Below, piece by piece: positions 413 through 46,041 of a stretch of 56,124 bases of DNA. The position numbers were made by a program, and so were the translations under genes. This DNA comes from Macrostomum lignano. Its lineage: Eukaryota. The stretch covers positions 1-56,124 of the forward strand of contig NIVC01000959.1 in the NCBI GenBank assembly GCA_002269645.1, written 5' to 3'. Under the pieces are notes generated by a model, which made no database searches, was not told where the DNA came from, and worked only from the letters and a program-made list of their open reading frames with translations. The stretch's first letter is position 1; each line of letters opens with the position of its first letter.

Positions 413-7667
<7,255 letters not shown>

Positions 7668-8881: not shown

Positions 8882-9822
8882 CCTGATCCCACTGCTTACA
8901 CCTGTGATCCCACTGCTCACATCTCTGATCCCACTGCTCACATCTCTGATCCCACTGCTCACATCTCTGATCCCACTGCTCGGATCTCTGATCCCACTGC
9001 TCACATCTTTGATCCCACTGCTCACATTTCTGATCCCACTGCTCACATCTCTGATCCCACTGCTCACATCTTTGATCCCACTGCTCACATCTCTGATCCC
9101 ACTGCTCACATCTCTGATCCCACTGCTCACATCTTTGATCCCACTGCTCACATCTCTGATCCCACTGCTCACATCTCTGATCCCACTGCTCACATCTCTG
9201 ATCCCACTGCTCACATCTCTGATCCCACTGCTCACATCTCTGATCCCACTGCTCACATCTCTGATCCCACTGCTCACATCTCTGATCCCACTGCTCACAT
9301 CTCTGATCCCACTGCTCTCATCTCTGATCCCACTGCTCACATCTCTGATCCCACTGCTCACATCTCTGATCCTACTGCTCACATCTCTGATCCCACTGCT
9401 CACATCTCTGATCCTACTGCTCACATCTCTGATCCCACTGCTCGCATCTCTTATCCTACTGCTCGAATCTCTGATCCCACTGCTCACATCTCTGATCCCA
9501 CTGCTCGCATCTCTGATCCCACTGCTCACATCTCTGATCCTACTGCTCACATCTCTGATCCCACTGCTCGCATCTCTTATCCTACTGCTCGAATCTCTGA
9601 TCCCACTGCTCACATCTCTGATCCTACTGCTCACATCTCTGATCCCACTGCTCACATCTCTGATCCTACTGCTCACATCTCTGATCCCACTGCTCGCATC
9701 TCTTATCCTACTGCTCGAATCTCTGATCCCACTGCTCACATCTCTGATCCCACTGCTCGCATCTCTGATCCCACTGCTCACATCTCTGATCCTACTGCTC
9801 ACATCTCTGATCCCACTGCTCG
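8882..9822 (+). repeat. 21-bp minisatellite (CTGATCCCACTGCTCACATCT), ~45 copies
   Basis: Direct inspection; immediately downstream of the GPCR stop. Confidence 0.98.
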
Positions 9823-9855: not shown

Positions 9856-12800
9856 TCAGCGACTGAGGCAGCCTCCATCCCCGCCTCCTTGGCGCAAGTC
9901 ACCGGTGGCCCCGGCAGTTGCCACCAGTCCTGAGCCGACCAACGGCAGCGAGACGCCGCCAGCGCAGTCCCCGCCGCAGTCGACGCGCCCAACTCCACCG
10001 CCTGCATCGCCTCCAGGAGGTCGGCAGCGGCAGATCAGCCGGCGCAGGTCGTCGCGAAATCTCGCCGACGACGCTGAGTAGACGAAGAAGTTCATCAGCG
10101 AATCGGTGACGGACAGCACGTTGGTGACGATGTCCGGGTGGAACGGCAGCCACTTCAGCAGCTCCGGCCAGAGCCCCAGCGCCGTTGTGGACACGAAGGT
10201 TGGAAACTCGAGCACGCAGAAGACGGCCGCCAGGCTGAGGACCATCCAGCTGGCTCGCTGGGAGGCCGCCTGACTTGACAGCCGCCTGTGCTGACACTTG
10301 GCGAGGCTGCGGCGGCTGCGGCGCAGCTGATGCCACATCACCGCGGTGGGCATCGGGATTAGCAGGGTCGGCACCAGAGACTGCGAGTTTCAGGGATTTA
10401 TTGGGCTTTAGGCTTTGCCAGCAGTTCACCATTCTCATCATTTTTGGCTTTGTGGCAACTGATGGGATCAGTGATGAGCAGGGATAGGCAGCGGCGGGAT
10501 CGGATGCCCAGTGCGGTGGGATCAGAGATGGGATTTGAGAGTGGTGGGATCAGAGATGGGATTTGAGAGTGGTGGCATCAGACATGGGATTTGAGAGTGG
10601 TGGGATCAGAGATGGGATTTGAGAGTGGTGGGATCAGAGATGGGATTTGAGAGTGATCAGATCAGAGATGGGATTTGAGAGTGATCGGATCAGAGATGGG
10701 ATTCGAGAGTGATGTGATCAGAGATAGGATTTGAGAGTGATCGGATTAGAGATGGTGGGATCAGAGATGGTGGGATCAGAGATGGTGGGATCAGAGATGG
10801 TGGGATCAGAGATGGTGGGATCAGAGATGGTGGGATCAGATCGAGATGGTGGGATCAGAGATGGTGGGATCAGAGATGGTGGGATCAGAGATGGTGGGAT
10901 CAGAGATGGTGGGATCAGATCGAGATGGTGGGATCAGAGATGGTGGGATCAGAGATGGTGGGATCAGAGATGGTGGGATCAGATCGAGATGATGGGATCA
11001 GAGATGGTGGGATCAGAGATGGTGGGATCAGAGATGGTGGGATCAGAGATGGTGGGATCAGATCGAGATGATGGGATCAGAGATGATGGGATCAGAGATG
11101 GTGGGATCAGAGATGGTGGGATCAGAGATGGTGGGATCAGAGATGGTGGGATCAGAGACGGTGGGATCAGAGATGGTGGGATCAGAGATGGTGGGATCAG
11201 ATCGAGATGGTGGGATCAGAGATGGTAGGATCAGAGATGGTGGGATCAGAGATGGTGGGATCAGAGATGGTGGGATCAGATCGAGATGGTGGGATCAGAG
11301 ATGGTAGGATCAGAGATGGTGGGATCAGAGATGGTGGGATCAGAGATGGTGGGATCAGAGATGGTGGGATCAGAGATGGTGGGATCAGAGACGGTGGGAT
11401 CAGAGATGGTGGGATCAGAGATGGTGGGATCAGAGATGGTGGGATCAGAGATGGTGGGATCAGAGATGGTGGGATCAGAGATGGTGGGATCAGAGATGGT
11501 GGGATCAGAGATGGTGGGATCAGAGATGGTGGGATCAGAGATGGTGGGATCAGAGATGGTGGGATCAGAGATGGTGGGATCAGAGATGGTGGGATCAGAG
11601 ATGGTGGGATCAGAGATGGTGGGATCAGAGATGGTGGGATCAGAGATGGTGGGATCAGAGATGGTGGGATCAGAGATGGTGGGATCAGAGATGGTGGGAT
11701 CAGAGACGGTGGGATCAGAGATGGTGGGATCAGAGATGGTGGGATCAGAGATGGTGGGATCAGAGATGGTGGGATCAGAGATGGTGGGATCAGAGATGGT
11801 GGGATCAGAGATGGTGGGATCAGAGATGGTGGGATCAGAGATGGTGGGATCAGAGATGGTGGGATCAGATCGAGATGGTGGGATCAGAGATGGTGGGATC
11901 AGAGATGGTGGGATCAGAGATGGTGGGATCAGAGATTGTGGGATAAGATCGAGATGGTGGGATCAGAGATGGTGGGATCAGAGATGGTGGGATCAGAGAT
12001 GGTGGGATCAGAGATTGTGGGATCAGAGATGGTGGGATCAGAGATGGTGGGATCAGAGATGGTAGGATCAGAGATGGTGGGATCAGAGATGGTGGGATCA
12101 GATCGAGATGATGGGATCAGAGATGGTGGGATCAGAGATGGTGGGATCAGAGATGGTGGGATCAGAGATGGTGGGATCAGAGATGGTGGGATCAGAGATG
12201 GTGGGATCAGAGATGGTGGGATCAGAGATGGTGGGATCAGAGATGGTGGGATCAGATATAGGATATGGAAGATTTTACGAGGAGATTCAGAGGATTCGAA
12301 CTCGGACTCGCCTGGAAGGCGTACACCGCCCAACTCAGGGCCTGGTTGCGCAGTAGCGGCCGGGCCACTATGCTGTCAGGCTCTAGGTTGGTGCACAGGA
12401 CGCCGGCCTCGGCGAGGTTGGCCGCCGCGGCCAGGCCGATCGCTAGCACCAGCGCCACGCCGAAGGCGGCGGCCAGGCGGCTCCGGTTGAACAGCAGGCA
12501 GCGTCTGACAGCCAGCGGCCGGGCAACCGCCTCGCAGCGGGCGGAGCAGATCAGCAGCACCGTCCAGTTGCGGGCCGACACCAGCGCGTTGATGGCAACG
12601 TGGACGCAGCTGGTGATGGCGAAGCTGGCGAGGGTGTGCCAGTGCTCGAGGCCGGTGCGCACGATGGCGACCTCGGCCAGCAGGGCACACTGCAGGCACA
12701 CCTCGGTGCAGGAGATGTACAGCAGCGACAGGCGAACTGCGCGATTGTCGAAATGCTGTCTGGCAAAGATGTACAGAGCCAGGGAGTTGGCGACCAGCGC

Positions 12801-12926
12801 AGTGGCGGCGATGGGCGCTATGACCAGGCAGGTGGCCCGCTCAGTGTCCAGGTAGTCATGCTCGTGCTCGTCCAGCGTCCGGTTCAGCTCGGACTGGTTG
12901 CAGCGGTCGCGGAAATAATACAGCAT
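9856..12926 (-). CDS. Orphan rhodopsin-like (class A) peptide-type GPCR, ~379 aa, FMRFamide/SPR/srw-like group
   Basis: Coding exons 12926-12312 and 10380-9856. N-terminal sequons NQS and NRT. Seven hydrophobic segments with TM1 [12 protein letters not shown]3 [20 protein letters not shown] (DRY-equivalent ARC), TM5 AVYAFQ|[11 protein letters not shown]6 FCVLEFP, TM7 [10 protein letters not shown] and helix 8 RFRDDLRRL. Start codon uncertain: there is an acceptor at 12960 and an in-frame upstream ATG at 13661. Confidence 0.88.
10510..12256 (+). repeat. 15-bp minisatellite (GGGATCAGAGATGGT), >100 copies, with a longer-unit subarray at the left end
   Basis: Fills most of the GPCR intron. Confidence 0.98.
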
Positions 12927-12966
12927 GCCGAGCTGCTGGGGACGGTGCGTTGAGGACTTCTGCAGT

Positions 12967-13628
12967 GATCCGATCCCACTGCTCACATCTCTGATCCCAC
13001 TGCTCACATCTCTGATCCCACTGCTCACATCTCTGATCCCACTGCTCGCATCTCTGATCCCACTGCTCACATCTCTGATCCCACTGCTCACATCTCTGAT
13101 CCTACTGCTCACATCTCTGATCCCACTGCTCACATCTCTGATCCCACTGCTCACAGCTCTGATCCCACTGCTCACATATCTGATCCCACTGCTCACATTT
13201 CTGATCCCACTGCTCACATCTCTGATCCCACTGCTTACACCTGTGATCCCACTGCTCACATCTGTGATCCCACTGCTCACATCTCTGATCCCACTGCTCA
13301 AATCTCTGATACCACTGCTCACATCTGTGATCCCACTGCTCACATCTCTGATCCCACTGCTCACATCTCTGATCCCACTGTTCACATCTCTGATCCCACT
13401 GCTCACATCTCTGATCCCACTGCTCGCATCTCTGATCCCACTGCTGACATCTCTGATCCCACTGCTGACATCTCTGATCCCACTGCTCACATCTCTGATT
13501 CCACTGCTCGCATCTCTGATCCCACTGCTCACATCTCTGATCCCACTGCTCACATCTCTGATCCCAGTGCTCATATCTCTGATCCCACTGCTCACATCTC
13601 TGATCCCAGTGCTCATATCTCTGATCCT
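12967..13628 (+). repeat. 21-bp minisatellite (CTGATCCCACTGCTCACATCT), ~31 copies
   Basis: Same unit as 8882-9822; immediately upstream of GPCR coding exon 1. Confidence 0.98.
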
Positions 13629-19747: not shown

Positions 19748-20015
19748 TATAAATAGAAGAGCAGCGGAGATGGGCTGATCGGATCATTTTTGGTTCGGAC
19801 GAAATCAATCGACGCTGGAGGTAAGCGTTGCTCATTTTTAAGCTTTGGAGACAGATTCAAGGCAAGCTTGCTAGGCCAAGAATTTAGTTATCTAAGTATT
19901 CCTTCTTGCCACGGTACTGGGAGTTGTCCGTGCCAAAACTCATTGCAGGATTTCTAAAACGTTTTAGACCTAAATGCACGGGGCGATTAATTTTCTTCCT
20001 TGATCCTTATCGCAG
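19748..20015 (+). promoter_or_regulatory. TATA box, non-coding first exon and 5'UTR intron of precursor A
   Basis: TATAAATA at 19748-19755; donor GGAG|GTAAGC at 19821; pyrimidine-rich acceptor ...ccttatcgcag| ending at 20015, 33 nt before the ATG. Confidence 0.6.
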
Positions 20016-20048
20016 ATTTCAAGCCACTTTTCAACGCGACGACAAAAA

Positions 20049-20453
20049 ATGCAGTCGCACATTTTCATCAGCCTGTGCCTTGGCCTGGCCGCGGCAACCG
20101 TCGCCGTGTCGGGTGCCTCCATCGGCAACTACGAGATGTCGAAGCGGCAGACGGACGCCTGGAGCGGCCACAAGCTCGAGGTGCCGATCAAGTGGCGCAA
20201 GCGTGGCCCAGAGCTCATCATTGACCGGCTAGACAAACGCGGCCCCGAGATGCTGCTCCAGCGCCACTTGTCTGGCAAGCGATTCCACAAGCGCGGCCCG
20301 GAGCTCATCATCGACCGGCTAGACAAGCGCGGCCCGGAGCTCATCATTGACCGGCTGGACAAACGTGGCCCCGAGATGCTGCTCCAGCGTCACTTGTCTG
20401 GCAAGCGATTCCACAAGCGCGGCCCAGAGCTCATCATCGACCGGCTGGACTGA
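20049..20453 (+). CDS. Neuropeptide/peptide-hormone precursor A (134 aa, signal peptide, multiple KR-flanked peptides)
   Basis: Hydrophobic signal MQSHIFISLCLGLAAATVAVSG, then KR-delimited QTDAWSGHKLEVPIKW, GPELIIDRLD x4, GPEMLLQRHLS-GKR x2 (amidation signal) and FH x2. Repeat copies differ at synonymous sites (att/atc, cca/ccg/ccc, cgt/cgc). Confidence 0.92.
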   Translation: MQSHIFISLCLGLAAATVAVSGASIGNYEMSKRQTDAWSGHKLEVPIKWRKRGPELIIDRLDKRGPEMLLQRHLSGKRFHKRGPELIIDRLDKRGPELIIDRLDKRGPEMLLQRHLSGKRFHKRGPELIIDRLD

Positions 20454-20940
20454 GCCAAAGCTGAGGCGCAGTGCTCACTATGACTTCGATGCTGGACACT
20501 GGTTTTTCCCTGCTTGTTTCATCGTCTGGATCAGCTGGCAATTTAAAATAAATATACCCTTTAGCTTAAGGCATCGTGCTTGCACTTCTGATATACCATC
20601 TTGAGTGGCTGATAGCAAAAGCTAGACTGGTTCAGTAACAATTCACAAACATTAACGTGTGCCCATGAGCTATGCAACTTTTACTTAAAGAAGTCAGCAA
20701 ACAAGCCACATATTCAAACACTGCGAGTAGTGTATTTCTGGTGGTTACTCTGCGGTCAGTGTTACTGATTTTGTAAGGGGAGGGTCTGTAAAACTACAAA
20801 AAATATCGGCGGCTAAGGCTTTTAGTCACGGATAGCTCTGTCGGCCATCCGTTAAAAATTTACTTTTAACTTCATACGATAGAAAAACCTTCCGTAAAAG
20901 TGATTTTGTCACTGGACGAGTGACATTCAATGCAAACCTC

Positions 20941-22563
20941 GATGGGCCACTCAATACATTTGCATGCATGCTATTTTCAGTTCAGTAGTAAGTTAAACTG
21001 AACCATTTAAATGTATTTTTAAGACAAGACTCATTTATTTACTCTTACCCCCCGCTTAAACCCTCAAACTCCACACTGAACCTCTGCTTCAGTCTAAATC
21101 TGCCATGTACATTTTAGTGGCTAATGTACATTATGTCTAAATCTGCCATGTACATTTTAGTGGCTAATGTACATTATGGCTGAACCAATACCAATTAGCA
21201 AGCTGTTTACGCCTGCAAGCTTGGCTTCTAAACTTATCAGTCATTTCAGCTGCTATTCTTGTATGTATTATGTATTATGTATTGTGATAAATAGGCAATT
21301 AGATAATAGCATGCACGGTAAGCAATTATTTAGGCCCTAGACAAACCTACTTGGAGCGTTTGGAGATTTTAAAGCTATTAATCCTAATCGCCTATCGCCG
21401 GTCGGCGAGTTCTACCAGTCTTTCTCCAATAGCCGCAGGTACAGTACAAGAAAATAAAGAACACGAGAGAACACAAACCGAAAGATTTAGAGAGTGATAA
21501 TCCTATATGATACAACTGATAATTGGCTAGACGATTTAATTTGATTATTCAGGCTACAGGATTCAAGCAATTCGCGGCGCAGATAATTAGACTGATGATA
21601 ACGAATAATAACGATTAATAATAATGATTATATTACGCACTGACAAGCGGATCTCAGCTTGAAGAAGAAGAAGGAGGCACCGAACACAGGACCACGGAGA
21701 AAGACTCCTAACCCCTGGCCTAAGCCAGAACCTACTCTCAAACGAGAGCCCTGCCGAATCGACCGTTCAACGGAGTACCGACTGAATTCTATCGGCACTG
21801 CCCTTCAGTGTAACACTGAGGCCCTCGGGGTCGAGGCCGCGTACTTGATCAGATCCGACAGTCTCTATCTAACCGCGCTTGATAGCGACGACGTCAGACA
21901 AGGGTGCCGAATCGTTACGCTATAAGACTGAAGCGGTTGGGCGGGGAACAAAACACGGACCGGGGGTGATGAATTCAGGCGCCTCAAAGCGCGAACCAAC
22001 AAGAGAGGAGAAATCGGGCCACCGGCCGGGAAGCTGGACAAGACAAAACCGGGGAAAGAGAGGCGAGAAGTGAGATCCGATTGCCAAATACACTTTCATA
22101 TATAGTCAGAGTCACAAGCCCTCAAAACCCCCCTCAAGCCGGGTGGTGGTCGTCTGGCCGGCCGCTTGCTTAAGCCGAATTGCACCGTGCCCGCGGCGCC
22201 GGGTAGAATTGAAACTTGCCGCGTGCCAGGGTCCAGGCCGGTTCTGATTGGCTGGCCGCGCAAAGCTGGGGTTCGCAGACAAACTCAATCCTCCGCTGAG
22301 TCACAAATTTGGCGTCTAACTCTAACCTGTTTACACAAAATTGATTCTAACTAACAAGGAAAAAGTACACCAAAAACGTATGACTAAACTAAAGCAAAAT
22401 AACAATTCAATAACAATATAGAAACGAATGCAGTCAATTTACAACAAAATACACGCAAAGATGCTCACACTACAGTATTCTTCTTTGCTACTGAACTGAA
22501 AGTAGAAAGCTGTTTTGCTAATTATATATGCCTGAGTGGCCCATCTAGTTTTTCTAGTATCCG
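20941..22563 (-). mobile_element. MITE-like element, copy 3, inverted and split by an insertion
   Basis: 20941-21282 is the reverse complement of the right/internal part; 22475-22563 is the reverse complement of the left end including its TIR (gcctgagtggcccatctagtttttctagtatccgtg). Confidence 0.7.
21283..22474. mobile_element. Solo-LTR-like insertion (~1.19 kb) nested in MITE copy 3
   Basis: Begins TGT (TGTGATAAATAGG), ends ACA (CACACTACA), flanked by GTAT at 21279-21282 and 22475-22478. The MITE consensus resumes after it. Contains AATAAA (+, 21453) and CCAAT/TATA-like motifs on the minus strand; no long ORF. Confidence 0.6.
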
Positions 22564-23896
22564 TGCACAAACCCGAGAAGTTATAAATGCCTCGAGAAAG
22601 TTTTCTAAAAATCTGCGAGGTCAGTTGGCATCGGATTAACAACGTCCGCCTGGAAGTCGGACTGGGAGACATTCGAATATTGAGCTAAGCATAGGCTAAG
22701 ATGTAACAGAAACAGCTGGAACGAGAAGGAATTGCATGTTATTTTAAAGAATAACTTAAGTCTTATTCAACTCCTAATCGCAAGATACTCAGGTCAGTTT
22801 TTACCGACTCACTGTGTGTCAAGATTGCCTGGCCAGGGTATGCTACTATACTCCCATTGACTGCAGCGGGTTGTTTTTGTTTCTGTACGCGTATCTTTCT
22901 TGCCACCAAACGCTTGGCTAGCTAAGTTGGGGCTCAGGAGCCCACAAATATATGGTAAAACTGGACGGCCGGCCTCCAGTCTTGGACACGTCTCATTCGT
23001 CTGTGCCACCTCGGGAGCCACTTCCCATGGAAAATACTCGTAGCTACTCGAACACTTGCAATCTGACTTCGTCATCAGAAAGATCATCAGGGACCTCTTG
23101 CTTACTGCAACCGGTACCAGCTCTGCATTTCCTAAGGGAGTTTTTCAAGCGTAAAAAGCTTTGAGGTTACTTGCAGTAGTCACTTGCTAAAAGATACAAG
23201 CTATACTGTTGACTTTGCAGAGAAAATGTTTCCGCTTTTGCGCTTCTATTCGCTTAAAAATAATTTCATTTAAAGCAAGTCGTTTCGGAATTGAAGGGCT
23301 GGGAGATGTGCAAAAATAGTGAAGCAGAGGGTGCTTGTCCTCGTGCTCAATGGGGGCGGAGGCAGTTTTAGAGCAGTTTCCCTACTGCAACAGGCGATTG
23401 GCCCGGGAAGTGAAGGAGAGAAGGTCTACCATCCCCCAGTGCGACTTCTCCGAGGAATAAATTTCTCCAAAACGGGGCGCTGCGTGGGAGTCGCTGCTGT
23501 TGCTGTTTCTATCGCTGACACTGCCGCGCGAGTTGCTCATCCGCCCTGCCTCTTTCTGCTAGCTGCAGCGAGTTCGAAGTATTGGGTAAGCTGCGACGCT
23601 TGATGAAAGTGGGGGGGGGGGCGGGGAAGTCAGCGGCTGGTGCTTTCTAGATGAGCTGCAATTTCCAGAAAAGTTCTGACCCGGATGCAGCTCTGCACTA
23701 TTGAACTTTGGACAGTTAATCCGAAAAATTGCTTTACTGCTGTTTTAAGGCTAGAAAAGAGCTGGCTTGCAATAATAACCTGCAAAAACATGGCAGTGTG
23801 AAACAAGCTGATTTATGCTTTGATTGACCTCGCATGACCTCACATAAATAAAAAGCGACGAAAAATTAGCCCCATAGATCAAAACGTTTATTGAGA

Positions 23897-24345
23897 ATGT
23901 GCATCCGTGATCCCAAGAAGCAGTTTAGAATGCGCATCCGTGATCCCAAGAAGCAGTTTAGAATGCGCATCCGTGATCCCAAGAAGCAGTTTAGAATGCG
24001 CATCCGTGATCCCAAGAAGCAGTTTAGAATGCGCATCCGTGATCGCAAGAAGCAGTTTAGAATGCGCATCCGTGATCCCAAGAAGCAGTTTAGAATGCGC
24101 ATCCGTGATCCCAAGAAGCAGTTTAGAATGCGCATCCGTGATCCCAAGAAGCAGTTTAGAATGCGCATCCGTGATCCCAAGATGCAGTTTAGAATGCGCA
24201 TCCGTGATCGCAAGAAGCAGTTTAGAATGCGCATCCGTGATCCCAAGAAGCAGTTTAGAATGCGCATCCGTGATCCCAAGAAGCAGTTTAGAATTTGCAT
24301 CCGTGATCCCAAGAAGCAGTTTAGAATGCGCATCCGTGATCCTAA
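23897..24345 (+). repeat. 33-bp minisatellite (GCATCCGTGATCCCAAGAAGCAGTTTAGAATGC), ~13-14 copies
   Basis: Direct inspection; in the putative 5'UTR intron of precursor B. Confidence 0.97.
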
Positions 24346-24397
24346 ATGTATGATCTTAAATTTCCTCTTATCCACTGCCCCAGCAGGCAAAAGGAAA

Positions 24398-24688
24398 ATG
24401 TCAGCTTGGCTCCCAGTTCTCTTGGGCCTAGTGCTCCTTGTCACTGTGTCAGCTGCTCCGGCCGCCAACGCCGACAAGCTTCAGGCTGCCTCGGGCCATC
24501 GGATGAAGCGGCAGACGGACGCGTGGAACGGGCACATCATCGATCTTGGCCGCAAGCGTCGCCGCTGGACCAACAGCGAAGCCGTCGTCGAATCGCCGCG
24601 TTGGCGTCGCGTCCCCTCGCGCTTGGGACCGCGCCGCGGATGGCTGCACGACAACGACGGCGACCTCTTGGTGATGGAAGACTATTGA
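24398..24688 (+). CDS. Neuropeptide precursor B (96 aa), paralog of precursor A
   Basis: Signal MSAWLPVLLGLVLLVTVSA; KR-QTDAWNGHIIDLG-RKRRR (predicted pQ...L-amide); further RR sites. Acceptor ...tccactgccccag(cag) just upstream; candidate upstream donor attgg|gtaagc at 23586. Confidence 0.85.
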   Translation: MSAWLPVLLGLVLLVTVSAAPAANADKLQAASGHRMKRQTDAWNGHIIDLGRKRRRWTNSEAVVESPRWRRVPSRLGPRRGWLHDNDGDLLVMEDY

Positions 24689-25167
24689 AAGAGACTGTCC
24701 TGAGCACTAAGGGCTAAAATATATCAATTAAGCATTGCAGATGGCTTAGAAATAGAATCGGATAAAATGTGATCTCTTCTGACAGAACCGATCGGCTTTG
24801 TTGTTGTTCGAATTTGCTCGAGTCGAGTTCTGCAGATTCTCATCGCTGATGCCATTGTGTGCTCAAGGCTTCACCTGAGTAATTGCAGTCAGATAATTCA
24901 CAATCTCCAGTGTCTGAAATCAACTCGAGCATGAATTGCAACTCGTTAGCGAGAGTACCATTGTCACTGCAAGTCGCTATTGTCAGTGTTAGACTGCTGT
25001 TATCAATAGAACTCTGTTATTTTTGGCCCGCTGGATACATTTTTTATGAGTATTTTTCATCCCTGGAAAGTCAGGCGTGAAAATAGGGATGCCAGCTTTG
25101 CAAGCCAAGGGTTTCCTATGGTTCCAGCTATACGAGTGCTGACAGCCTTGAATGCAGCGCAATAGAG

Positions 25168-25330
25168 GGGCAGAGCAGCTCAGCGGTAACGGCTGACTCT
25201 CGCGCCACCGACCCCTGGTTCGATTCCGTGCGCGACCGAATTCATTGGGGGCTTGTCGTGGAAAGTCAAAGAGCCGCTGTGCACCCTGTGTGAGCGTGTG
25301 CATGAGGGCGTGCCTGCGTACAGTATTGGC
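25168..25330 (+). mobile_element. tRNA-derived SINE-like element, copy 1
   Basis: A-box-like AGCTCAGCGGTA, B-box GGTTCGATTCC (25217-25227), then a body (ccgaattcatt...ccgctgtgcaccctgtgtgagcgtgtg...gcgtgcctgcgtacagta) shared with 27340-27570. Confidence 0.6.
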
Positions 25331-26928: not shown

Positions 26929-29611
26929 ATGAACAGTCTGGAGTACCGCCTTGCCGCTCTGGCTGACAAGGAGCAGGTGTCCGTGTGCCACGGGGACGAT
27001 CCCGGCACCATCTACAATGGCCTGGACTATGTGCCGCAGAGGTACCGCATGGCCCTGTCCAGCAGTAACAAAATCTGCGGCCTCTGCTTTGACAGGCAAG
27101 CTGGTAGAGTGGTGAGTGGAACTCGCCGATCAAAAGAGTCAACCAACATTTGCTGAATGTTTCACAACAAACTGACTACGAGCCGTATTCGTACCAGGGT
27201 TGCGGGCATCCTGGTCAAACGTCCACAGTGTCCATCGTCTCAAAATCAGAGCTGAGGCAGTTTTGGCCATTCCCCTGACTCCTGAGTGCATGTGCTTCGA
27301 GTGCGCAGATAGTGTACACAGACACAAACTCATTCACACGTTCGCACAGCGTGTACAATGGCCTGACGACCTCTGGTTCGACTCCGTGTGTGGCCGAATT
27401 CATTTCCGGGCTTGTGCACGACAGTAGGCCGGCGGTTGTCGTTCGATCCGCACCCATGAGGGCCAGCCTCCAAGGCACAGAGACTGTACATGCCTGACGA
27501 TTAGAAAATCGGGGCCGCTGTGCACCCTGTGTGAGCGTGTGTGCGAGTGCGTGCCTGTGTACAGTACGCTCGTATTAACGCGCTTGTATGCGTGCTCAGG
27601 AGTCACACGGACGGGCAGAATTGCCTCAGCGCTTTCAGTTCAGAGTGCCCGCAGCTTGCCTGCGAGTGTTTATTTTTCTAATCAATCAGTCAGTCAGTCA
27701 GTCAGTCAGTCCATTCTTCACAAGTTCAGGTGGCCTACGGTCAAATCTTCGTATTCGACGGCGGGCGCCACATGCTGCTGACAGGCCTGCGGGTGCATCC
27801 GCTCTACCAGGGCCGCGGAATCGCCACCGAGCTTCGCAACTTTCTCTGCCGCGAGACGCGCAAGAAATTTCCGGAAGTGAGCCCGGAAGTTCGATTCGGC
27901 GTCTACAAGCCGCAGTTCAGCAGCGCGGAGTTCTTCGCTCAGAACTTGGACTACACCCTGATCTCGAAGAGGGTGAGAAATTTTATTGAGGCGGCAAAAT
28001 ATCCCCTATTTCTAACTCTTATAAGCATAACTGGGGCATTTTGTTATTTCTCTTTTCAGCACTATTACGTGGTAAGCCGCACGGAAGTTAAAGTTGTTTC
28101 AATATTTTGATTGGAGTCAAGGGAGACGCAGAGAGACATGGTGAGACACTGTGAGACACTGTGAGACACTGTGAGACACGTTGAGACACTGTGAGACATT
28201 GTGAGACACTGTGAGACATGGTGAGACACTCTGAGACACTGTGATACATGGTGAGACATTGTGAGACACTGTGAGACACTGTGAAACACTGTGAGACACT
28301 GAGACACTGTGAGACACTGTGATACATGGTGAGACACTGTGAGACACTGTGAGACACTGTGAGACACTGAGACACTGTGAGACACTGTGAGACGCTGAGA
28401 CACTGTGAGACACTGTGATACATGGTGAGACACGGTGAGACACGGTGAGACACTGTGAGACATGGTGAGACACTCTGAGACACTGTGAAACACTATGAGA
28501 CACTTACAGTCTCACAATAGTCAACTTCACAATGCCTCCCTCGCTAGACGGAGTTTCCCCTGTCCCAGCTGTCGCAGCTCCGTGACGCAATCTCCAGAGC
28601 CCGCAGCGCATCCGAGCTGCGCCATGCTCAGGAGGTCGTGTGGACCACCCGCAGCCGCCTGTACACCGCGATGCTGAAGGACTCGGCATTTCAGCAACTG
28701 TATAGTGGCTCCGTTATCTCCATCAACTTTGAGCTACTTGAACTGGACGAGTCTAACCTTGCTGTGCTGCCGGGAGACAGCGGAAGCGGCCCCGAAGGCG
28801 ATGACAACGCTCCGAACAGCGTCATGGTCGCCACGAACGACGGGCAGCTGGTGCTGGGGTACGGAAGCACTTTGTACTGCCGGAAGGGCCTGCGCGCGGA
28901 CTTTGACTTGTACTGCAATGGACTGGATAGGGGTGAGACCGGCCTGGATTGGTTGAATTGTGACCGGATTGAGATGTGATGATGGATGTACTTACTCACT
29001 GGCCTGGGACATTGGGGCGCCAACCGACAGGAGCGGCCCACAAAGAGATAGGGGCGCCTACCAAAAGACAGGGGGGCCAACCAAGTGACAGGGGCGCCCA
29101 CCAACTGACAGGGGCGCCAACCAAGAGACAAGGGCGCCAACCAAGTGACAGGGGCGCCAACCAAGAGACAAGGGCGCCAACCAAGAGACAGAGGCACCCA
29201 CCAAGAGGCCAAATATTTGCACCCATTGAGGTTGCAGCCCGTCCAATTAAAGTTCCCGCACTGTTTTTCAGTCCCTACATATAATTGCGAATTCTTTGCG
29301 AATTTTCAGCGGACTTCTCATCCGAGACCCTAGCTGGTCTGTGCTCAAGCCTGGTGATCGGCTTCCTGTCTCAGCTTCTAGCCACCGATGGTGAGCAACT
29401 GGCCGCAATTCCTGAGCAATCGTTGTCGTTGTTCGTTTCGCTCGACTGTTTCAGCGGCACCAGTTTGAGTCCGTGCTCAAACTGCGATTTGGAGTCGCGA
29501 TTGTCTGCCAGTCTCCAAAGCCTCATCAGCGAGGAGCTGATGCTCAGGCATCCGTTCTATTCCGAGGGCTGCCCCTACGCTCTGCTGAAGAGGAGAGTGC
29601 GATTGGATTGA
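26929..29611 (+). CDS. GNAT-family N-acetyltransferase, NAT16/histidine N-acetyltransferase-like, ~367 aa
   Basis: Exons 26929-27111, 27730-27972, 28060-28071 (microexon), 28569-28932, 29310-29611, phase-consistent. IYNGLDYVP N-terminal motif and LRVHPLYQGRGIA acetyl-CoA motif A resemble my recollection of the NAT16 family. Confidence 0.8.
27340..27570 (+). mobile_element. tRNA-derived SINE-like element, copy 2 (intron 1 of the GNAT gene)
   Basis: B-box GGTTCGACTCC (27375-27385), ccgaattcatt, and the same 3' body ccgctgtgcaccctgtgtgagcgtgtg...gcgtgcctgtgtacagta; carries extra internal sequence relative to copy 1. Confidence 0.55.
28128..28503 (+). repeat. 10-bp minisatellite (TGAGACACTG)
   Basis: Direct inspection; GNAT intron 3. 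Confidence 0.96.
29010..29205 (+). repeat. ~20-bp minisatellite (GGGGCGCCAACCAAGAGACA-like)
   Basis: Direct inspection; GNAT intron 4. Confidence 0.9.
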
Positions 29612-37573: not shown

Positions 37574-38349
37574 ATGGAGTCCAGGAGCAAGCAGTTTTAT
37601 CCTTAGTGAGAGAGAAGCGATCTATTAAAAAGAGAAGAAGGTAAATAGCATGACCTTTTTGCCCGACAGGCCAATAACCAGTGCCCTTTAACGCCATAGA
37701 CTATTAACACCCGCTAATGTCGAATTTGCGGGCAAATAATGTTCTTTTGACCATAGACAGTTTGTTGTTTCTGTTTCTTGCTCTCTACGCTGCCCGACTC
37801 TGCCCCCTAACACCCCCACCCTTGCTATGAAAGTGTAGCCTGAGCAAATATGTTTATGGTAGCTCGTATATTAGCTTGATTCTCTCACTTAGGATTTAAC
37901 TGCTTGCTAATCAGTTGGCTTGTAAAAAATACAACAGTGTTCTGTTAACGGATTTCGCAGCAAAGATTAGCCTTCTGCGCAGCGTTAAACCAGAGGTTTT
38001 ACCATAGACAAAACTCATGCACTTGTTTCATTCGCAAACTCAGAAGCTGAAAATGTGAGATTAGATGTGCTATCTTGCTAATGCATAGACTTCTATCCTA
38101 GTTTCTAGCAGTATTTTAACCAATGATTCAAGTTTCCTTAGATCTGAAACAAATCCAATTTCAATTATCTTTCTTACGTCTAATCCATATTTACTAGCTA
38201 GATAAAAACTATTAGATGCTACACTGCTGTGCAAGGATTGACACCTATATTTGAATTATTCTGTCTGATATTTGCAAACATTTTTCTTTCAAGTATTTTC
38301 TGTTTTGGGTAAACAACAAGCGGATTCAGGAATTATTGGATGAGATCAG

Positions 38350-38992
38350 GGCGATGGGATCAAAGCGATGGGATCAGAGTGATGGGATCAGAGTGATGGG
38401 ATCAGAGTGACGGGATCAGAGTGATGAGGTCAGATTGATGGGATCAGAGTGATGGGATCAGCGTGATGGGGTCAGAGTGATGAGGTCAGAGTGATAGGAT
38501 CAGAGTGATGGGATCAGAGTGACGGGATCAGAGTGATGAGGTCAGAGTGATGGGATCAGAGTGATAGGATCAGAGTGATGGGGTCAGAGTGATGGGATCA
38601 GAGTGATGGGATCAGAGTGATGGGGTCAGAGTGATGGGATCAGAGTGATGGGATCAGAGTGACGGGATCAGAGTGATGAGGTCAGAGTGATGGGATCAGA
38701 GTGACGGGATCAGAGTGATGGGATCAGAGTGACGGGATCAGAGTGATGAGGTCAGAGTGATGGGATCAGAGTGACGGGATCAGAGTGATGAGGTCAGATT
38801 GATGGGATCAGAGTGACGGGATCAGAGTGATGAGGTCAGATTGATGGGATCAGAGTGATGGGGTCAGAGTGATGAGGTCAGATTGATGGGATCAGAGTGA
38901 TAGGATCAGAGTGACGGGATCAGAGTGACGAGGTCACAGTGATGGGATCAGAGTGACGGGATCAGAGTGATGAGGTCACAGTGATGGGATCA
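38350..38992 (+). repeat. 14-bp minisatellite (GATGGGATCAGAGT)
   Basis: Direct inspection; shares the GGGATCAGAG core with the GPCR arrays. Confidence 0.96.
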
Positions 38993-40464
38993 GAAGAGTG
39001 GGCTACAGAAGCCTCAGAAAGCAGGTCCAAACGAAAAAGCAACAAGAGCTCAGACGCGGCAGTGGCTGCCAGTATATCTCAGGCCAGAGGAGAAGGGCAG
39101 GAAAAGATTTCAAAGGCGGGACAGAAGCAGGTCCCGCCGCGCGCGGCAGTGCAGTGTGTGCTGAATTTTATTTTCAGTTCTGTTTCACCTGTAAAACTCT
39201 ATAGTAGCGCAAAGCTAAAAGAGGCGCCGCAGCAGGCAACAGCGCCGCAGGAGAGAATTTGGGAAGATGTGCGCTCCGGCCTTGCTTTATGCTTAGTCAA
39301 AGACACGGACAAGCAAACAAACGAACAAAAAGCAAAAGTGTTGCCAACAAACACAAACAGAGAGAGAGAAAACCACAGCGGACAAAATGGGAAGTAGAAG
39401 GCGGAGTCGAGCTCCGCAGCAGCCCAGCGCAGGTCTGCATGTACAAAATAGGCCTGTTCGCAGTGCGAGCCGAATCTGGCTGGGCTGGCGGGGGCGGCAG
39501 AAAAAAGCAGCACAAGAAAAGCAAAGTAGAAGAGAGAAAAAAACGGAACACGCACGCAAAAAAACCGCAAAAAACTCGGTGGGGGGGGCGGCATGGGTGA
39601 CAGAAAATGGAGGCAAAATTCACGGATTTCATTTCTTCTTCTTGAAAAAGAGACCTGCGCCGGACATTACGAGCTAGTTTTTGAAAAAGCACTGGCGACA
39701 GACATGAAGCGAAAACAAATTGCTGAATAAAAGCGAGGGACTGAATGCCAAAATGGAGGCTTAAATTAAAAAAAATTGGAATATAGCCGACTTTGTTCAA
39801 CACACAGTACTAGCAATAGTATTTAATGGCTCTGCAAAAGAAGACTTCGGGGTCAAGGTAGAAATCAAATTGTTGTTGAGCGCAGACAACAGCGGTCAGA
39901 AATCAATTTACAAGCAGAAATTTTCACCAAAAACGCTTTTTTTGATTTTGAATATTCACGCCGCCTTACTGCCGGTCTCTGCTAGGCCCAAGTTCAATGC
40001 CCGGGGTAGTTCAGCCGACAAATGAAAAAATAGAGGGGAGCGAGACAGACAGAACAGAAAAAAAGCAGACAACGGCAGCGCGCATTGGAACAGCTGAGGA
40101 GAAGCATGGCGGGGGCGGAACCTTTCTAAAGCGCAATTTACAGACAATATTGAACTTCTTGACTGGCTGTCAAAGAGAGTGCGTGTGCAACAGAGAGGCA
40201 CAACATCAAAGAGAGAGACAGAGAAAAAAACGCACAAGCACACAAAAAAGCAGAAAGAAAAAATCTCATCAAATGACACCGACAAACAAAATTTTGTTTA
40301 AACGCGCCACAACAGCAAAAAATGTGTCTCTGTCTGTCCTGTCCGATGGGAGCGAGAATACAGTTAGGCGTTCGGAGGGCTGAGAAGGAGGAGGAGGAAG
40401 AGGAGGTGTGGGCTGAGAAGGAGACGGAGTCGAGCATGTCGCTGCCGGAGCTCGGAGCGGCGGC

Positions 40465-43400
40465 TCACTGAGGCTCGGCAGATGCGGTCAGCCCCATGGG
40501 ATGGTAGGCCGTAGCGGTGGGGTCCAGGCCGGCCGCCGCGCTGGCATAGTACAGCGGAGCCGCGTCCGGGGTGGCGTACAGCGACGTCTGCGGCGCGGCC
40601 AGCAGCTGCGGTCCGTACATGCCGGCCGCGGCAGCGTAACTTGACGGGTCGATGAGCCAGGAATTGCGCTGGTGCTGCGAATGCGAGTTTTGGTTACGGC
40701 TGGATTTTCACAACGGCTGAGATTACTTATCTGACTCTTGTCACTCTACTGACTCAACTGACCATCTGACTCAAGTCCCAGATCAGTCTGGGACTTGCCA
40801 CTCCGCTGACTTGTCACTCCATTGACTTGTCACTCCATTGACTTGTCACTCCATTGACTTGTCACTCCACCTGACCACCTATCTATTCTGGGACTTGTCA
40901 CTCCATTGACTTGTCACTCCACCTGACCACCTATCTATTCTGGGACTTGTCACTCCATTGACTTGTCACTCCGCTGACTTGTCACTCCACCTGACCTATT
41001 TAGTCTGAGACTTATCGCCCCACCTGACCTACCTAGTCTGAGACTTGTCACTCCACCTGACCTACCTAGTCTGAGACTTGTCACTCCACCTGACCTACCT
41101 AGTCCGGGAATCCAGTCCGGGATTAGACAACCCCCTAGGCTCCCACCTGGTGCAGCCTCCTCACCTGATACAGCGAAGGCGCTCCGGCTCCGGCCCCTCC
41201 GGTCATGGCGGAGGCGGGCGACGCCTGGAACACGTAGCTGGTGTGAGCTGGCGCGCTGGGCGGCGCCGCGGCCGGGGTCACCCGGCTGGTGTAGCTGGTC
41301 AGGGCCGAGGACTGCACGGCGGCCGGGCTGTACAGTTGGGCTGCGGCTCCGGACTGCAGCATCTGGGCGTTGTAGCCGCCGGGCATAACAGCAGCGGCGG
41401 CGGCTGCGGCGCCTCGGGCGGCGGCGGCCAGAGCGGCCGGATTCTGCTGGAAGATGCTGAGCGGCAGCTGGCCGCCAGGCGGGCTGGGCCCGAGGCCGTG
41501 ATGGGCGGCCAGGCCGGGCTGCTGCTGCTGCTGGGCGCGCTGCTTCTTCCGCTGATTGGTCTTGTCGGCCAGCTTGGCCTCCAGCGGCCTCGGGCAGCCG
41601 TACTTCTGGCCAAGGGCGGTGCCGTTCTTATTGATGTGAGCGATCGCTGTCACAGCGTCCTGGTCCTTCTCGAACCGGATGAAGCCGGCCCCGGTGGCGC
41701 TGGTCTGCTGCCGGGTGCTCGGGTCGGTGGCCCGCATCACTCGGCAGCTGATGATGCGGCCAGTCAGGCCGTTGCCCAGCTCGTCGGTGAAGACGCGGCT
41801 CATCCATTCCTCGTTGCACTCCGGCCGGGTGGGCAGGTTCTTGATGTAGATGTTGGTGGGGTCCTTCTCGGACTCCTGCGCCGTGGGGGGGGGAATTAGG
41901 GAAGGCTTTTTTATATTTGACTCTTGGTTGGTGCATTAACAATAAAACTGCTCACTTTGAGCTGCTGCATCCGTGACTGCAATTTTTATAATTCTCATTC
42001 TTTCAACCTACTTTGATAAATGTTAAAATATTACTATGGCGCTTCTCCGTGAGAATGCTGAAGAGCTGTTGATGAAAGCTAGAGAGTGATTCCCTGGTGG
42101 AAGCTGGAGAGTGATTCCCTGGGGGAAGCTAGAGGGCGATTCCCTGGGGGAAGCTAGAGGGTGATTCCCTGGGGGAAGCTAGAGGGTGATTCCCTGATGG
42201 AAGCTAGCAACTCCATCGAAGGTAAAGTTGATTTCCTGATGGAAGCTGGAGGGTGATTCCCGGGGGGAAGCTATAGGGTGATTCCCTGGGGGAAGCTATA
42301 GGGTGATTCCCTGGGGGAAGCTAGAGGGTGATTCCCTGGGGGAAGCTAGAGGGTGATTCCCTGATGGAAGCTAGCAACTCCTCCCTGATCGAAGGTAAAG
42401 TTGATTTCCTGATGGAAGCTGGAGGCCGACTTCAGTAAGTCGCATCAGCTGACTGTACAGCGATGGACCAATCGATAATATTTCATGCTGACAACAACAA
42501 ATAAAATGATTCTCAAACACGAGGTGCGCCATAGACTACTAGATTATGAGTAGTATTATCATAATGTCTGAAGTACTGCACAAGTTGCACTAGTTAACCA
42601 ACTATCCAAAAAACCGACTGTGTTTTGCCCTGTTTCCATTTTTTCTAAAATAAAATAAATTATTGGCTTTCAACAGTTCAAAGCGAACTCTGATAGGAAA
42701 TTCGGGAAGAAAAAGGATAGTAGGGATAAAAGGTGAGCAAAGTAACCCGTGCTGTGCTTCGCTTGGCGTGCCAACACTCGGTATAAATGTAAATGAAGCC
42801 AGGTCGGTGTCACTCTGGTCTATTAAAACATTTATTACCCCATCCCACATATACTAAATCTACTTTACACATACTAAAATAACTAAGATGGGCCACTCAT
42901 GCATATATACTTAGTAAAACAGCTTTCTACTTACAGTTTAGTAGCAAAGAAGAATACAAAAGCTATTTTATAAAAATAAAGGCAGCTGAAAGTTTAGAAG
43001 CCCAAGCTTGCAGGCGTAAACAACTTGCTAATTGGTTCAGCAATAATGTACATTAGCCAGTCCACTGAAATGTACATGGCAGCTTTAGGCTGGAATTCCG
43101 AGAAAGGCAATAAAAATTGGGGCGCGGCGGGGGCAGTGTGGAAAGGCGCGGTTGGAGGGTTTAAGCTGGGGGTAAGAGCCAATAAATGAGCCTTGACTTC
43201 AAAAATACATTAAAATGCTTCTGTTTAAATTACTACTGAACTGAAAGTAGCTTACAGGCAAATGTGCTGAGTGGCCCATCTCTAGTTATTCTAGTATCTG
43301 TGATCTACCGAAAGATAAGAATTCACAATTCTGGCATTAAAAACACACACACAAAATAAACTTTCTTGCCGCGATTGCCGTGTGTGACAAAAAGACAAAA

Positions 43401-45893: not shown

Positions 45894-45960
<67 letters not shown>

Positions 45961-45980
45961 GGCAGGCAGGCAGGCAGGCA

Positions 45981-46041
<61 letters not shown>

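What the first reader, a model, noticed from the sequence alone, without database searches (positions are those of the whole stretch)
20049..24688. Tandem pair of prohormone genes defining an unrecognised pQTDAW[S/N]GH peptide family
Seen: two same-strand signal-peptide ORFs about 4 kb apart, each with a short pro-spacer then M(S)KR-QTDAW(S/N)GH. The DNA differs at synonymous positions (gcc/gcg, ggc/ggg) while the peptide is kept, and the rest of the precursors is largely unalignable. Known: KR sites are cut by PC1/PC2, N-terminal Gln cyclises to pyroGlu, and G-K/R marks amidation. Predicted products are pQTDAWSGHKLEVPIKW (gene A) and pQTDAWNGHIIDL-amide (gene B). Both genes seem to have a non-coding first exon with a GTAAGC donor. 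Inference: a duplicated neuropeptide or secreted signalling-peptide locus whose conserved unit is the QTDAWxGH peptide. I do not recognise it among flatworm or bilaterian neuropeptide families. A gland or seminal-fluid origin is an alternative.
Basis: partly seen in the sequence, partly recalled or inferred. Interest (0 to 1): 0.88.

Follow-up and report, generated by a model that had tools for sequence, protein, structure and literature searches.

The report
Orphan flatworm prohormone-like gene pair
Two neighbouring, transcribed genes of the flatworm Macrostomum lignano encode small secreted precursors that look like neuropeptide prohormones and share a KR-QTDAW(S/N)GH motif with no detectable relatives, which makes them a plausible but ordinary kind of lineage-specific signalling-peptide locus.

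Summary
The window is a Macrostomum lignano scaffold. ORF A (20049-20453, 134 aa) and ORF B (24398-24688, 96 aa) lie 4.35 kb apart on the + strand. Each has a signal-peptide-like N-terminus, a short spacer, then KR-QTDAW(S/N)GH. No other part of the two precursors aligns. Both are GenBank genes from an RNA-seq-built annotation, named only "hypothetical protein". The GenBank product of gene A confirms the non-coding first exon and the GTAAGC intron. Gene A also carries 4x GPELIIDRLD and 2x GPEMLLQRHLS-G, all between KR sites. Its two 126-nt internal repeats differ at 7 sites, all synonymous, which shows selection on the peptide sequence. Pfam, 5.8 billion clustered proteins, a HMMER scan of 1.84 billion representatives, and full-text and supplement searches gave no relative and no earlier description. 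The two main flatworm neuropeptide catalogues and other Macrostomum data could not be searched. The prohormone reading fits all testable features. Neuronal expression, processing, pyroGlu and amidation remain inferred. The "family" is so far two paralogues in one species. Orphan prohormones are common in flatworms, so this is a new member of a known kind, of modest interest.

The parts
19748..19755 (+). TATA box (TATAAATA) of gene A, about 30 nt upstream of the 5' end of the annotated transcript
   Evidence: Read from the sequence. Promoter function is inferred.
19779..19820 (+). Gene A exon 1, non-coding (minimum extent)
   Evidence: The first 14 residues of GenBank product PAA74283.1 (P0003) are the translation of this stretch, spliced to 20016.
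19821..20015 (+). Gene A intron, 195 nt, GTAAGC...CGCAG
   Evidence: The spliced translation reproduces P0003. The annotation is RNA-seq derived.
20049..20453 (+). Gene A CDS, 134 aa prepropeptide (BOX15_Mlig017097g3), all on exon 2
   Evidence: GC3 is 0.85 against 0.45 GC in the intergenic DNA.
20049..20114 (+). Gene A predicted signal peptide (aa 1-22, cleavage VSG|AS)
   Evidence: Hydrophobic core and the -3/-1 rule. SignalP was not available.
20142..20195 (+). K32R33 followed by QTDAWSGHKLEVPIKW (predicted pyroGlu 16-mer), ending before R50K51R52
   Evidence: Processing is inferred.
20198..20449 (+). Two in-frame 126-nt units, each encoding KR-GPELIIDRLD-KR-GPEMLLQRHLSG-KR-FH-KR-GPELIIDRLD. 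In total 4x GPELIIDRLD (20205, 20295, 20331, 20421) and 2x GPEMLLQRHLSG (20241, 20367).
   Evidence: TRF and repeat finder. The units differ at 7 sites, all synonymous third positions.
20547..20552 (+). AATAAA polyadenylation signal of gene A
   Evidence: Sequence. Inferred.
23586..24383 (+). Putative intron of gene B (GTAAGC donor, CCCCAG acceptor), containing a 33-bp minisatellite (23894-24342). The acceptor could instead take a trans-spliced leader.
   Evidence: Sequence. No transcript evidence was available to me for exon 1 of gene B.
24398..24688 (+). Gene B CDS, 96 aa prepropeptide (BOX15_Mlig028894 cluster)
   Evidence: GC3 is 0.74.
24398..24454 (+). Gene B predicted signal peptide (aa 1-19, cleavage VSA|AP)
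   Evidence: The -3/-1 rule. Inferred.
24506..24565 (+). K37R38, then QTDAWNGHIIDL-G (predicted pyroGlu, amidated 12-mer), then R52KRRR56
   Evidence: Processing is inferred.

Best explanation
Two adjacent paralogous genes of Macrostomum lignano each encode a small preproprotein, with the whole coding sequence on one exon, that enters the secretory pathway.

Proposed steps, all inferred from established prohormone biochemistry. The signal peptide is removed. A PC2- or furin-type convertase cuts at the KR/RKR/RR sites. A carboxypeptidase trims the basic residues. Gly-extended ends are amidated. N-terminal Gln cyclises to pyroGlu.

Predicted products of gene A: pQTDAWSGHKLEVPIKW, four copies of GPELIIDRLD, two copies of GPEMLLQRHLS-NH2 and two FH dipeptides.

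Predicted products of gene B: pQTDAWNGHIIDL-NH2, WTNSEAVVESPRW, VPSRLGP and GWLHDNDGDLLVMEDY.

The peptides most likely act as neuropeptides or peptide hormones on GPCRs. The QTDAWxGH unit is the only element the two paralogues have kept, so it is the best candidate for a shared bioactive core. Gene A additionally delivers multi-copy GPE(L/M)-type peptides.

Shown: gene reality, transcription, the gene A intron, precursor architecture, selection on the gene A repeat peptides, and the absence of detectable relatives. Inferred: cell type, cleavage, modifications and receptor.
For: - Species and genes. The annotation is built purely from RNA-seq, so both genes have transcript support.
- Splicing of gene A exon 1 to exon 2 reproduces GenBank PAA74283.1. 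TATA and AATAAA signals are in the expected places.
- Coding signal: GC3 is 0.85 and 0.74 against 0.45 intergenic GC.
- Purifying selection: the two 126-nt units of gene A differ at 7 sites with no amino-acid change, P about 6e-5 with 25% synonymous sites.
- Architecture: an N-terminal hydrophobic segment with -3/-1 sites. Gene A has 9 dibasic sites after residue 20. Three Gly-dibasic amidation signals can be read from the translations. The mature regions contain no Cys.
- The motif is shared beyond chance for this pair.
- The tandem arrangement is kept on all three assembly copies.
- M. lignano has a pc2 homologue that is expressed in the nervous system and is essential (Arbore 2015, PMC4490696).
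- Planarian prohormones were defined by the same criteria, a signal sequence plus multiple dibasic sites, and many of them are orphans (spp-1 to spp-19) (Collins 2010, PMC2953531).
Against: - No expression localisation and no peptidomic data were available.
- No orthologue exists in any searchable database, so conservation beyond the species is unknown.
- GPELIIDRLD is acidic and not amidated, as spacer peptides often are.
- Three of gene B's sites (RMKR, RKRR, RWRR) fit the furin consensus R-X-K/R-R, so gene B could be processed in any secretory cell.
- One assembly copy of gene A (L001) has a 1-bp deletion in a C run that breaks the frame. This is either an assembly error or a decaying copy.
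- The gene IDs appear in none of the seven supplement sets searched, so there is no positive expression evidence from them.
Confidence: 0.65

Rival explanations
1. The genes encode secreted peptides of non-neuronal glands, such as prostate or seminal fluid, pharyngeal or epidermal glands, or a pheromone or defence secretion. Furin/Kex2-type enzymes process them in the constitutive or gland secretory pathway. They are not neuropeptides.
For: - Gene B's cleavage sites RMKR, RKRR and RWRR fit the furin consensus (read from the sequence).
- The sequences are lineage-restricted and fast-diverging, with no homologues. This is typical of reproductive and secretory proteins in Macrostomum (title and abstract of Brand 2020, PMC7336406).
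- GPELIIDRLD is acidic and unamidated.
Against: - The IDs are absent from the held supplements of the seminal-fluid in situ screen and of the germline/neoblast lists. This is weak, because ID systems differ and the stored files may be cut.
- Multi-copy short peptides with Gly-KR amidation signals and a pGlu/amide 12-mer are more typical of neuropeptides.
- The peptides are neutral to acidic, unlike cationic antimicrobial peptides.
Confidence: 0.2
2. The genes are prohormones, but QTDAWxGH is not the bioactive unit. It is a conserved pro-region element for sorting or processing, or a co-released by-product. The active products are gene A's repeated GPE(L/M) peptides. Gene B is a diverging paralogue whose first peptide fuses QTDAWNGH to an IIDL remnant of that repeat.
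For: - Direct evidence of selection exists only for the gene A repeat unit.
- B's GH-IIDL-G-RKR can be aligned to A's GPEL-IIDRLD-KR if a 15-aa gap is allowed, with a shared catcatcga at the DNA level. This is my own reading and was not tested statistically.
- Copy number usually marks the main product of a precursor.
Against: - The motif lies directly after a KR site in both genes, so it would be released as the N-terminus of a free peptide.
- It is the only segment the two paralogues retain, which argues for function of the peptide itself.
- In gene B it forms a classic pGlu...amide peptide.
Confidence: 0.15
3. The pair are highly derived members of an already described family, for example the GnRH/corazonin/AKH type (pGlu...W...G...amide) or a flatworm npp/spp family listed in a catalogue I could not read.
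For: - The predicted 12-mer of gene B has pGlu, Trp, Gly and a C-terminal amide, and is followed by a single associated peptide. Its length matches 10-12-mer GnRH/corazonin peptides. This resemblance is from my own knowledge and is a lead only.
- McVeigh 2009 and Koziol 2016 could not be read.
Against: - No Pfam family reached E<=1 apart from two below-cutoff matches in gene A, DUF761 and SURF2, which are unrelated to neuropeptides.
- The peptide is not directly after the signal peptide (9-aa and 17-aa spacers plus KR).
- Gene A's version is not amidated.
- No 4-mer of the peptides occurs in the planarian prohormone supplements.
- No peptide string occurs in 8.3 million full texts.
Confidence: 0.05
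4. The ORFs are chance or non-functional, and the shared motif is coincidence.
For: A 25-bit match would not be significant in an all-against-all six-frame comparison of a 56-kb window. One copy (L001) has a frameshift.
Against: - Both ORFs are RNA-seq-derived gene models.
- GC3 is strongly frame-specific.
- All seven differences between the internal repeats are synonymous.
- 0 of 20,000 shuffles reach 9/10 identity.
- The ORFs and their arrangement are kept on three contigs.
Confidence: 0.02

Closest known systems
Planarian orphan prohormones (Schmidtea mediterranea spp-1 to spp-19 and npp genes; Collins et al. 2010, PMC2953531)
   Same: Small flatworm precursors recognised by a signal sequence plus multiple dibasic sites. 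They are often multi-copy, often lack similarity outside flatworms, and are processed by PC2.
   Different: No sequence similarity. None of TDAW, IDRL, GPEL, GPEM, WSGH or WNGH occurs in that paper's supplements. Here there is no mass-spectrometric or in situ validation.
GnRH / corazonin / AKH-type precursors
   Same: Gene B's predicted product is a 12-residue peptide with pGlu and a C-terminal amide that contains Trp and Gly. It is followed by a basic cluster and one C-terminal associated peptide (own knowledge of the family; a lead only).
   Different: In that family the peptide follows the signal peptide directly. Here a 9-aa or 17-aa spacer plus KR intervenes. Gene A's peptide has no amidation signal. 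No match to any neuropeptide Pfam model was reported.
Multi-copy, non-amidated peptide precursors (pedal peptide/orcokinin type) and, mechanistically, Kex2-processed repeat precursors such as yeast alpha-factor
   Same: Tandem copies of a 10-12-residue, partly acidic peptide separated by KR sites, downstream of a signal peptide and pro-region. Gene A has 4 + 2 copies.
   Different: There is no match to the characteristic termini of pedal peptide/orcokinin peptides, and no homology was detected. The comparison is about how it works, not about ancestry.

Membership tests
Peptide prohormone (operational definition used for flatworms, Collins 2010) | N-terminal signal sequence | tested here: met
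   Both have a hydrophobic core with -3/-1 sites, VSG|AS in A and VSA|AP in B, and no other hydrophobic segment. This is heuristic only, as SignalP was not available.
Peptide prohormone (operational definition used for flatworms, Collins 2010) | Multiple dibasic cleavage sites flanking short peptides | tested here: met
   Gene A has 9 dibasic sites after residue 20, flanking 4x GPELIIDRLD, 2x GPEMLLQRHLSG and QTDAWSGH.... Gene B has KR, RKRRR, RR and RR.
Peptide prohormone (operational definition used for flatworms, Collins 2010) | Gene is transcribed | tested here: met
   The GenBank models come from an RNA-seq-only annotation. The spliced 5' end of gene A is reproduced. I did not inspect the reads themselves.
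Peptide prohormone (operational definition used for flatworms, Collins 2010) | Processed peptides detected by mass spectrometry and dependent on PC2 | not testable with these tools
   No peptidomic data. Expected masses were computed. A pc2 homologue exists in M. lignano.
Neuropeptide (as opposed to another secreted peptide) | Expression in neurons or neurosecretory cells | not testable with these tools
   No expression atlas was reachable. The IDs are absent from all supplements searched.
GnRH/corazonin/AKH superfamily | Bioactive peptide immediately follows the signal peptide | tested here: not met
   Spacers of 9 aa (A) and 17 aa (B) plus KR precede the Gln.
GnRH/corazonin/AKH superfamily | N-terminal pGlu and C-terminal amide (Gly-dibasic) on an 8-12-mer | tested here: inconclusive
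   Gene B fits the prediction (QTDAWNGHIIDL-G-RKR, 12 aa). Gene A does not (16-mer, no Gly before RKR).
GnRH/corazonin/AKH superfamily | Sequence match to family profiles | tested here: not met
   The Pfam scan at E<=1 lists no such family for either protein.
Any protein family represented in the public databases searched | Detectable sequence homologue outside M. lignano | tested here: not met
   Only self hits in 5.8 billion clusters and in 1.84 billion representatives searched with a HMMER profile.
Planarian spp/npp prohormone families | Shared peptide motif | tested here: not met
   No 4-mer match in the Collins 2010 supplements. The McVeigh 2009 and Koziol 2016 catalogues are not held, so the test is incomplete.

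The most novel reading that the evidence does not exclude
QTDAWxGH peptides are a genuinely new neuropeptide family. They would be conserved at least across Macrostomorpha, released as pGlu peptides (the gene B form also amidated), and signal through an orphan flatworm GPCR. The most extreme sub-readings are that the receptor is the divergent peptide-type GPCR about 7 kb upstream on the opposite strand, or that these are the long-diverged flatworm representatives of the GnRH/corazonin lineage. I put each of those at no more than 0.03.
Probability: 0.2. Interest if true: 0.5.

Novelty: new member of a known kind. Interest (0 to 1): 0.3.

Why it matters
If the peptides are real, they add an orphan peptide-signalling system to Macrostomum lignano, the one flatworm model with routine transgenesis. 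A promoter reporter, RNAi and GPCR deorphanisation are all directly feasible there; about 2 kb of upstream sequence was enough for faithful tissue-specific reporters (Wudarski 2017). The locus also shows how paralogous prohormones diverge: everything except the released N-terminal peptide has changed, and the internal repeats differ only at synonymous sites. It does not change current understanding. Flatworm genomes are known to hold many lineage-specific prohormones, and these genes are already in GenBank as hypothetical proteins.

Tried and rejected
- Homology with full-length A and B against 5.8 billion clusters: only self hits.
- HMMER profile of A+B against 1.84 billion representatives: only self hits.
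A pattern search for KRQTDAW.GH across all proteins could therefore not be done.
- Pfam: nothing meaningful for A or B.
- Rfam, at gathering threshold over the window and at E<=1 over 19.5-25.5 kb: nothing. ARAGORN: no tRNA.
- Literature. Peptide strings and gene IDs gave no true hit in full text. The 20 of 75 'qtdaw' matches that were listed are 2006-2007 BMC papers unrelated to peptides, apparently equation-encoding text.
- Supplements of Wudarski 2017, Brand 2020, Grudniewska 2018, Collins 2010, Weber 2018, the 2026 ploidy paper and Mouton 2018: no occurrence. One paper had no held supplements.
- Koziol 2016 and McVeigh 2009 are not held. No M. lignano single-cell atlas was found.
- Comparing the three assembly copies to measure selection was rejected. 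They are 98-99% identical including the flanks, so they carry no information.
- The 92-aa GenBank isoform as a real splice variant was rejected. No GT-AG 126-nt gap can produce it, so it is a collapsed-repeat artefact or a short allele.
- The long ORFs over the 33-bp minisatellite (23866-24477 on the - strand, 23891-24688 on the + strand) are stop-free repeat artefacts.

Full report
**What the window is.** Both ORFs of the finding match GenBank proteins of Macrostomum lignano, assembly GCA_002269645.1. The window is a complete 56,124-bp scaffold of that assembly. It has about 50% GC and is packed with mini- and microsatellites; TRF returns 56 rows. These create many long stop-free ORFs that are not genes.

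**The observation.** ORF A (20049-20453, 134 aa) and ORF B (24398-24688, 96 aa) lie on the + strand, 4349 nt apart. The bacterial-code ORF list fuses gene B to an upstream minisatellite ORF that starts at TTG 23891. The true start is ATG 24398, as in the GenBank protein.
- A reads: signal-like MQSHIFISLCLGLAAATVAVSG, spacer ASIGNYEMS, KR, QTDAWSGHKLEVPIKW, RKR, and then the repeats.
- B reads: MSAWLPVLLGLVLLVTVSA, spacer APAANADKLQAASGHRM, KR, QTDAWNGHIIDL, G, RKRRR, and then a unique C-terminal part.
- BLASTP aligns only KRQTDAW(S/N)GH plus four more residues (E=6e-5 for the pair).
- At the DNA level only 20141-20179 and 24505-24543 are similar, at 85%.
- A 9/10-identical window never arose in 20,000 shuffles.
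- With GC3 of 0.85 and 0.74, identity at six of eight degenerate third positions is about what codon bias alone gives. The synonymous differences are therefore real but cannot test selection. The argument for constraint on the motif is that it alone survives in otherwise unalignable precursors.

**The genes are real and transcribed.**
- The GenBank annotation of this assembly was built exclusively from RNA-seq: a StringTie/TACO genome-guided assembly plus a de novo transcriptome, with gene ends set from trans-splicing and poly(A) reads (Wudarski et al. 2017, PMC5730564).
- Gene A is BOX15_Mlig017097g3 (PAA74283.1). Gene B belongs to the BOX15_Mlig028894 cluster.
- PAA74283.1 is a 5'-partial product whose first 25 residues, SDHFWFGRNQSTLE|ISSHFSTRRQK, are exactly the translation of 19779-19820 joined to 20016-20048.
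- That confirms a non-coding exon 1, a 195-nt intron (19821-20015, GTAAGC...CGCAG) and a coding sequence lying entirely on exon 2.
- TATAAATA sits at 19748, about 30 nt upstream of that 5' end. AATAAA sits at 20547.
- For gene B, the GTAAGC at 23586 and the acceptor at 24382-24383 give an analogous 798-nt intron that holds the 33-bp minisatellite. I found no transcript evidence for it. A trans-spliced leader at the same acceptor is equally possible, since 38.8% of M. lignano genes are trans-spliced.

**Selection on the gene A repeat.** Residues 51-134 of gene A are two in-frame 126-nt units. Each encodes KR-GPELIIDRLD-KR-GPEMLLQRHLSG-KR-FH-KR-GPELIIDRLD.
- That gives four copies of GPELIIDRLD and two of GPEMLLQRHLS-Gly, an amidation signal.
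- The units differ at seven nucleotides. All seven are third-position and synonymous, and none changes an amino acid.
- With 25% synonymous sites, P is about 6e-5.
- This is direct evidence that the peptide sequence, not the DNA, has been preserved since the internal duplication. It is the strongest single argument that gene A is a functional multi-copy peptide precursor.
- The two peptide types resemble each other, both starting GPE[LM][IL][IL] (my reading of the translation).

**Other copies in the assembly.** Two further contigs, NIVC01003721 (L001) and NIVC01000197 (L002), carry the same tandem pair.
- They are 98-99% identical to the window through genes and flanks alike. This fits the neopolyploid genome (PMC10733133, abstract) and tells nothing about selection.
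- Gene A is identical in all three, apart from a 1-bp deletion in a C run in L001 that breaks the frame. This is an assembly error or a decaying copy.
- Gene B differs by two synonymous changes and N59S.
- The GenBank products of gene A lack one 42-aa unit (92 aa instead of 134). No GT-AG gap of 126 nt can generate that, so it is a collapsed-repeat artefact or a shorter allele.

**Relatives and prior description.**
- No meaningful Pfam family matches.
- There are no relatives among 5.8 billion protein clusters or among 1.84 billion representatives scanned with a HMMER profile of both proteins.
- No peptide string or gene ID occurs in 8.3 million full texts.
- None of six 4-mers from the peptides occurs in the planarian prohormone supplements.
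- The IDs are absent from the supplements of six M. lignano papers.
- Limits: the databases evidently hold no other Macrostomum data, because even M. lignano hits come only from NCBI. The two main flatworm neuropeptide catalogues are not held.

**How it most likely works.** The architecture meets the operational criteria used to find flatworm prohormones, a signal sequence and multiple dibasic sites (Collins et al. 2010). M. lignano has a pc2 homologue that is expressed in the nervous system and is essential (Arbore et al. 2015).
- I therefore take both genes to be prohormone-like precursors. They would be cut at KR/RKR/RR, trimmed, amidated at Gly-extended ends and cyclised at N-terminal Gln.
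- These steps follow from established prohormone biochemistry and are not shown here.
- Caveats: GPELIIDRLD is acidic and unamidated, as spacers often are. Gene B's sites RMKR, RKRR and RWRR fit the furin consensus, so a non-neuronal secretory origin remains open at about 0.2.
- It is also possible that the motif is a pro-region element and that the repeats are the active products.

**Comparison with known families.** In working terms this is a flatworm orphan prohormone like the planarian spp/npp genes. It is not a demonstrable member of any sequence family. The pGlu...W.G...amide 12-mer of gene B recalls GnRH/corazonin-type peptides. However, the defining position directly after the signal peptide is not met, gene A is not amidated, and no profile matches.

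**Verdict.** I rate it a new member of a known kind and of modest interest (0.3).

Noticed in passing
window 9856-10374 (-) and about 12252-13000 (-): A divergent rhodopsin-type GPCR gene lies 7-10 kb upstream of gene A on the opposite strand. The C-terminal exon matches 7TM_GPCR_Srw at E=2.9e-6 and 7tm_1 at 2.6e-4, and has an NFFVY (NPxxY-like) motif. The closest solved structure is galanin receptor 2, E=0.0028. The N-terminal exon has no PDB or Pfam 7TM hit. Its intron is filled by a 15-bp minisatellite (10515-12256). A peptide-type receptor next to two prohormone-like genes may well be coincidence.
   Followed up: partly
window 8883-9821, 12972-13627, 10515-12256, 38339-38994: Minisatellites share related units: a 21-bp unit GATCCCACTGCTCACATCTCT at two sites, and 14-15-bp GGGATCAGAG-type units at two more. 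They give stop-free ORFs of 300-470 codons in several frames on both strands. The window as a whole yields 56 TRF rows.
   Followed up: no
window 5591-5960: A perfect (TAG)n microsatellite of 123 copies at 100% identity.
   Followed up: no
window 23894-24342: A 33-bp minisatellite (13.6 copies, 97% identical) lies inside the putative intron of gene B. It is stop-free on both strands, so the ORF list merges it with gene B into a false 265-aa ORF.
   Followed up: yes
L001 about 6145 (equivalent to window 20243): One of the three assembly copies of gene A lacks one C in a C run, which shifts the frame after GPELIIDRLDKRGP. This is a long-read homopolymer error or a pseudogenised polyploid copy.
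   Followed up: partly
window 20198-20449 and GenBank PAA74283.1: The GenBank products of gene A (92 aa; 117 aa partial) lack one 42-aa repeat unit that is present in all three genomic copies. No canonical 126-nt intron can explain this, so it is probably a collapsed repeat in the short-read transcript assembly.
   Followed up: yes
window about 25150-25240: A stretch that looks tRNA-like by eye, including GGTTCGATTCC at 25217-25227, is not called by ARAGORN or Rfam at E<=1. It may be a tRNA-derived repeat or pseudogene.
   Followed up: partly
window 27730-28110 (+): An ORF with a GNAT acetyltransferase domain (Acetyltransf_1, E=1.1e-5), probably one exon of a gene downstream of gene B.
   Followed up: no
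window 41135-41803 (-) and 45727-46392 (-): Possible exons of an RNA-binding protein. There is a weak RRM_1 match (E=0.026, below the cutoff) and an RNP-like NLYIRGL segment. The second ORF runs into an (ACAG)n repeat, which gives a spurious Cys-repeat hit.
   Followed up: no
window 21092-21177: A perfect 43-bp tandem duplication in the A-B intergenic region.
   Followed up: no
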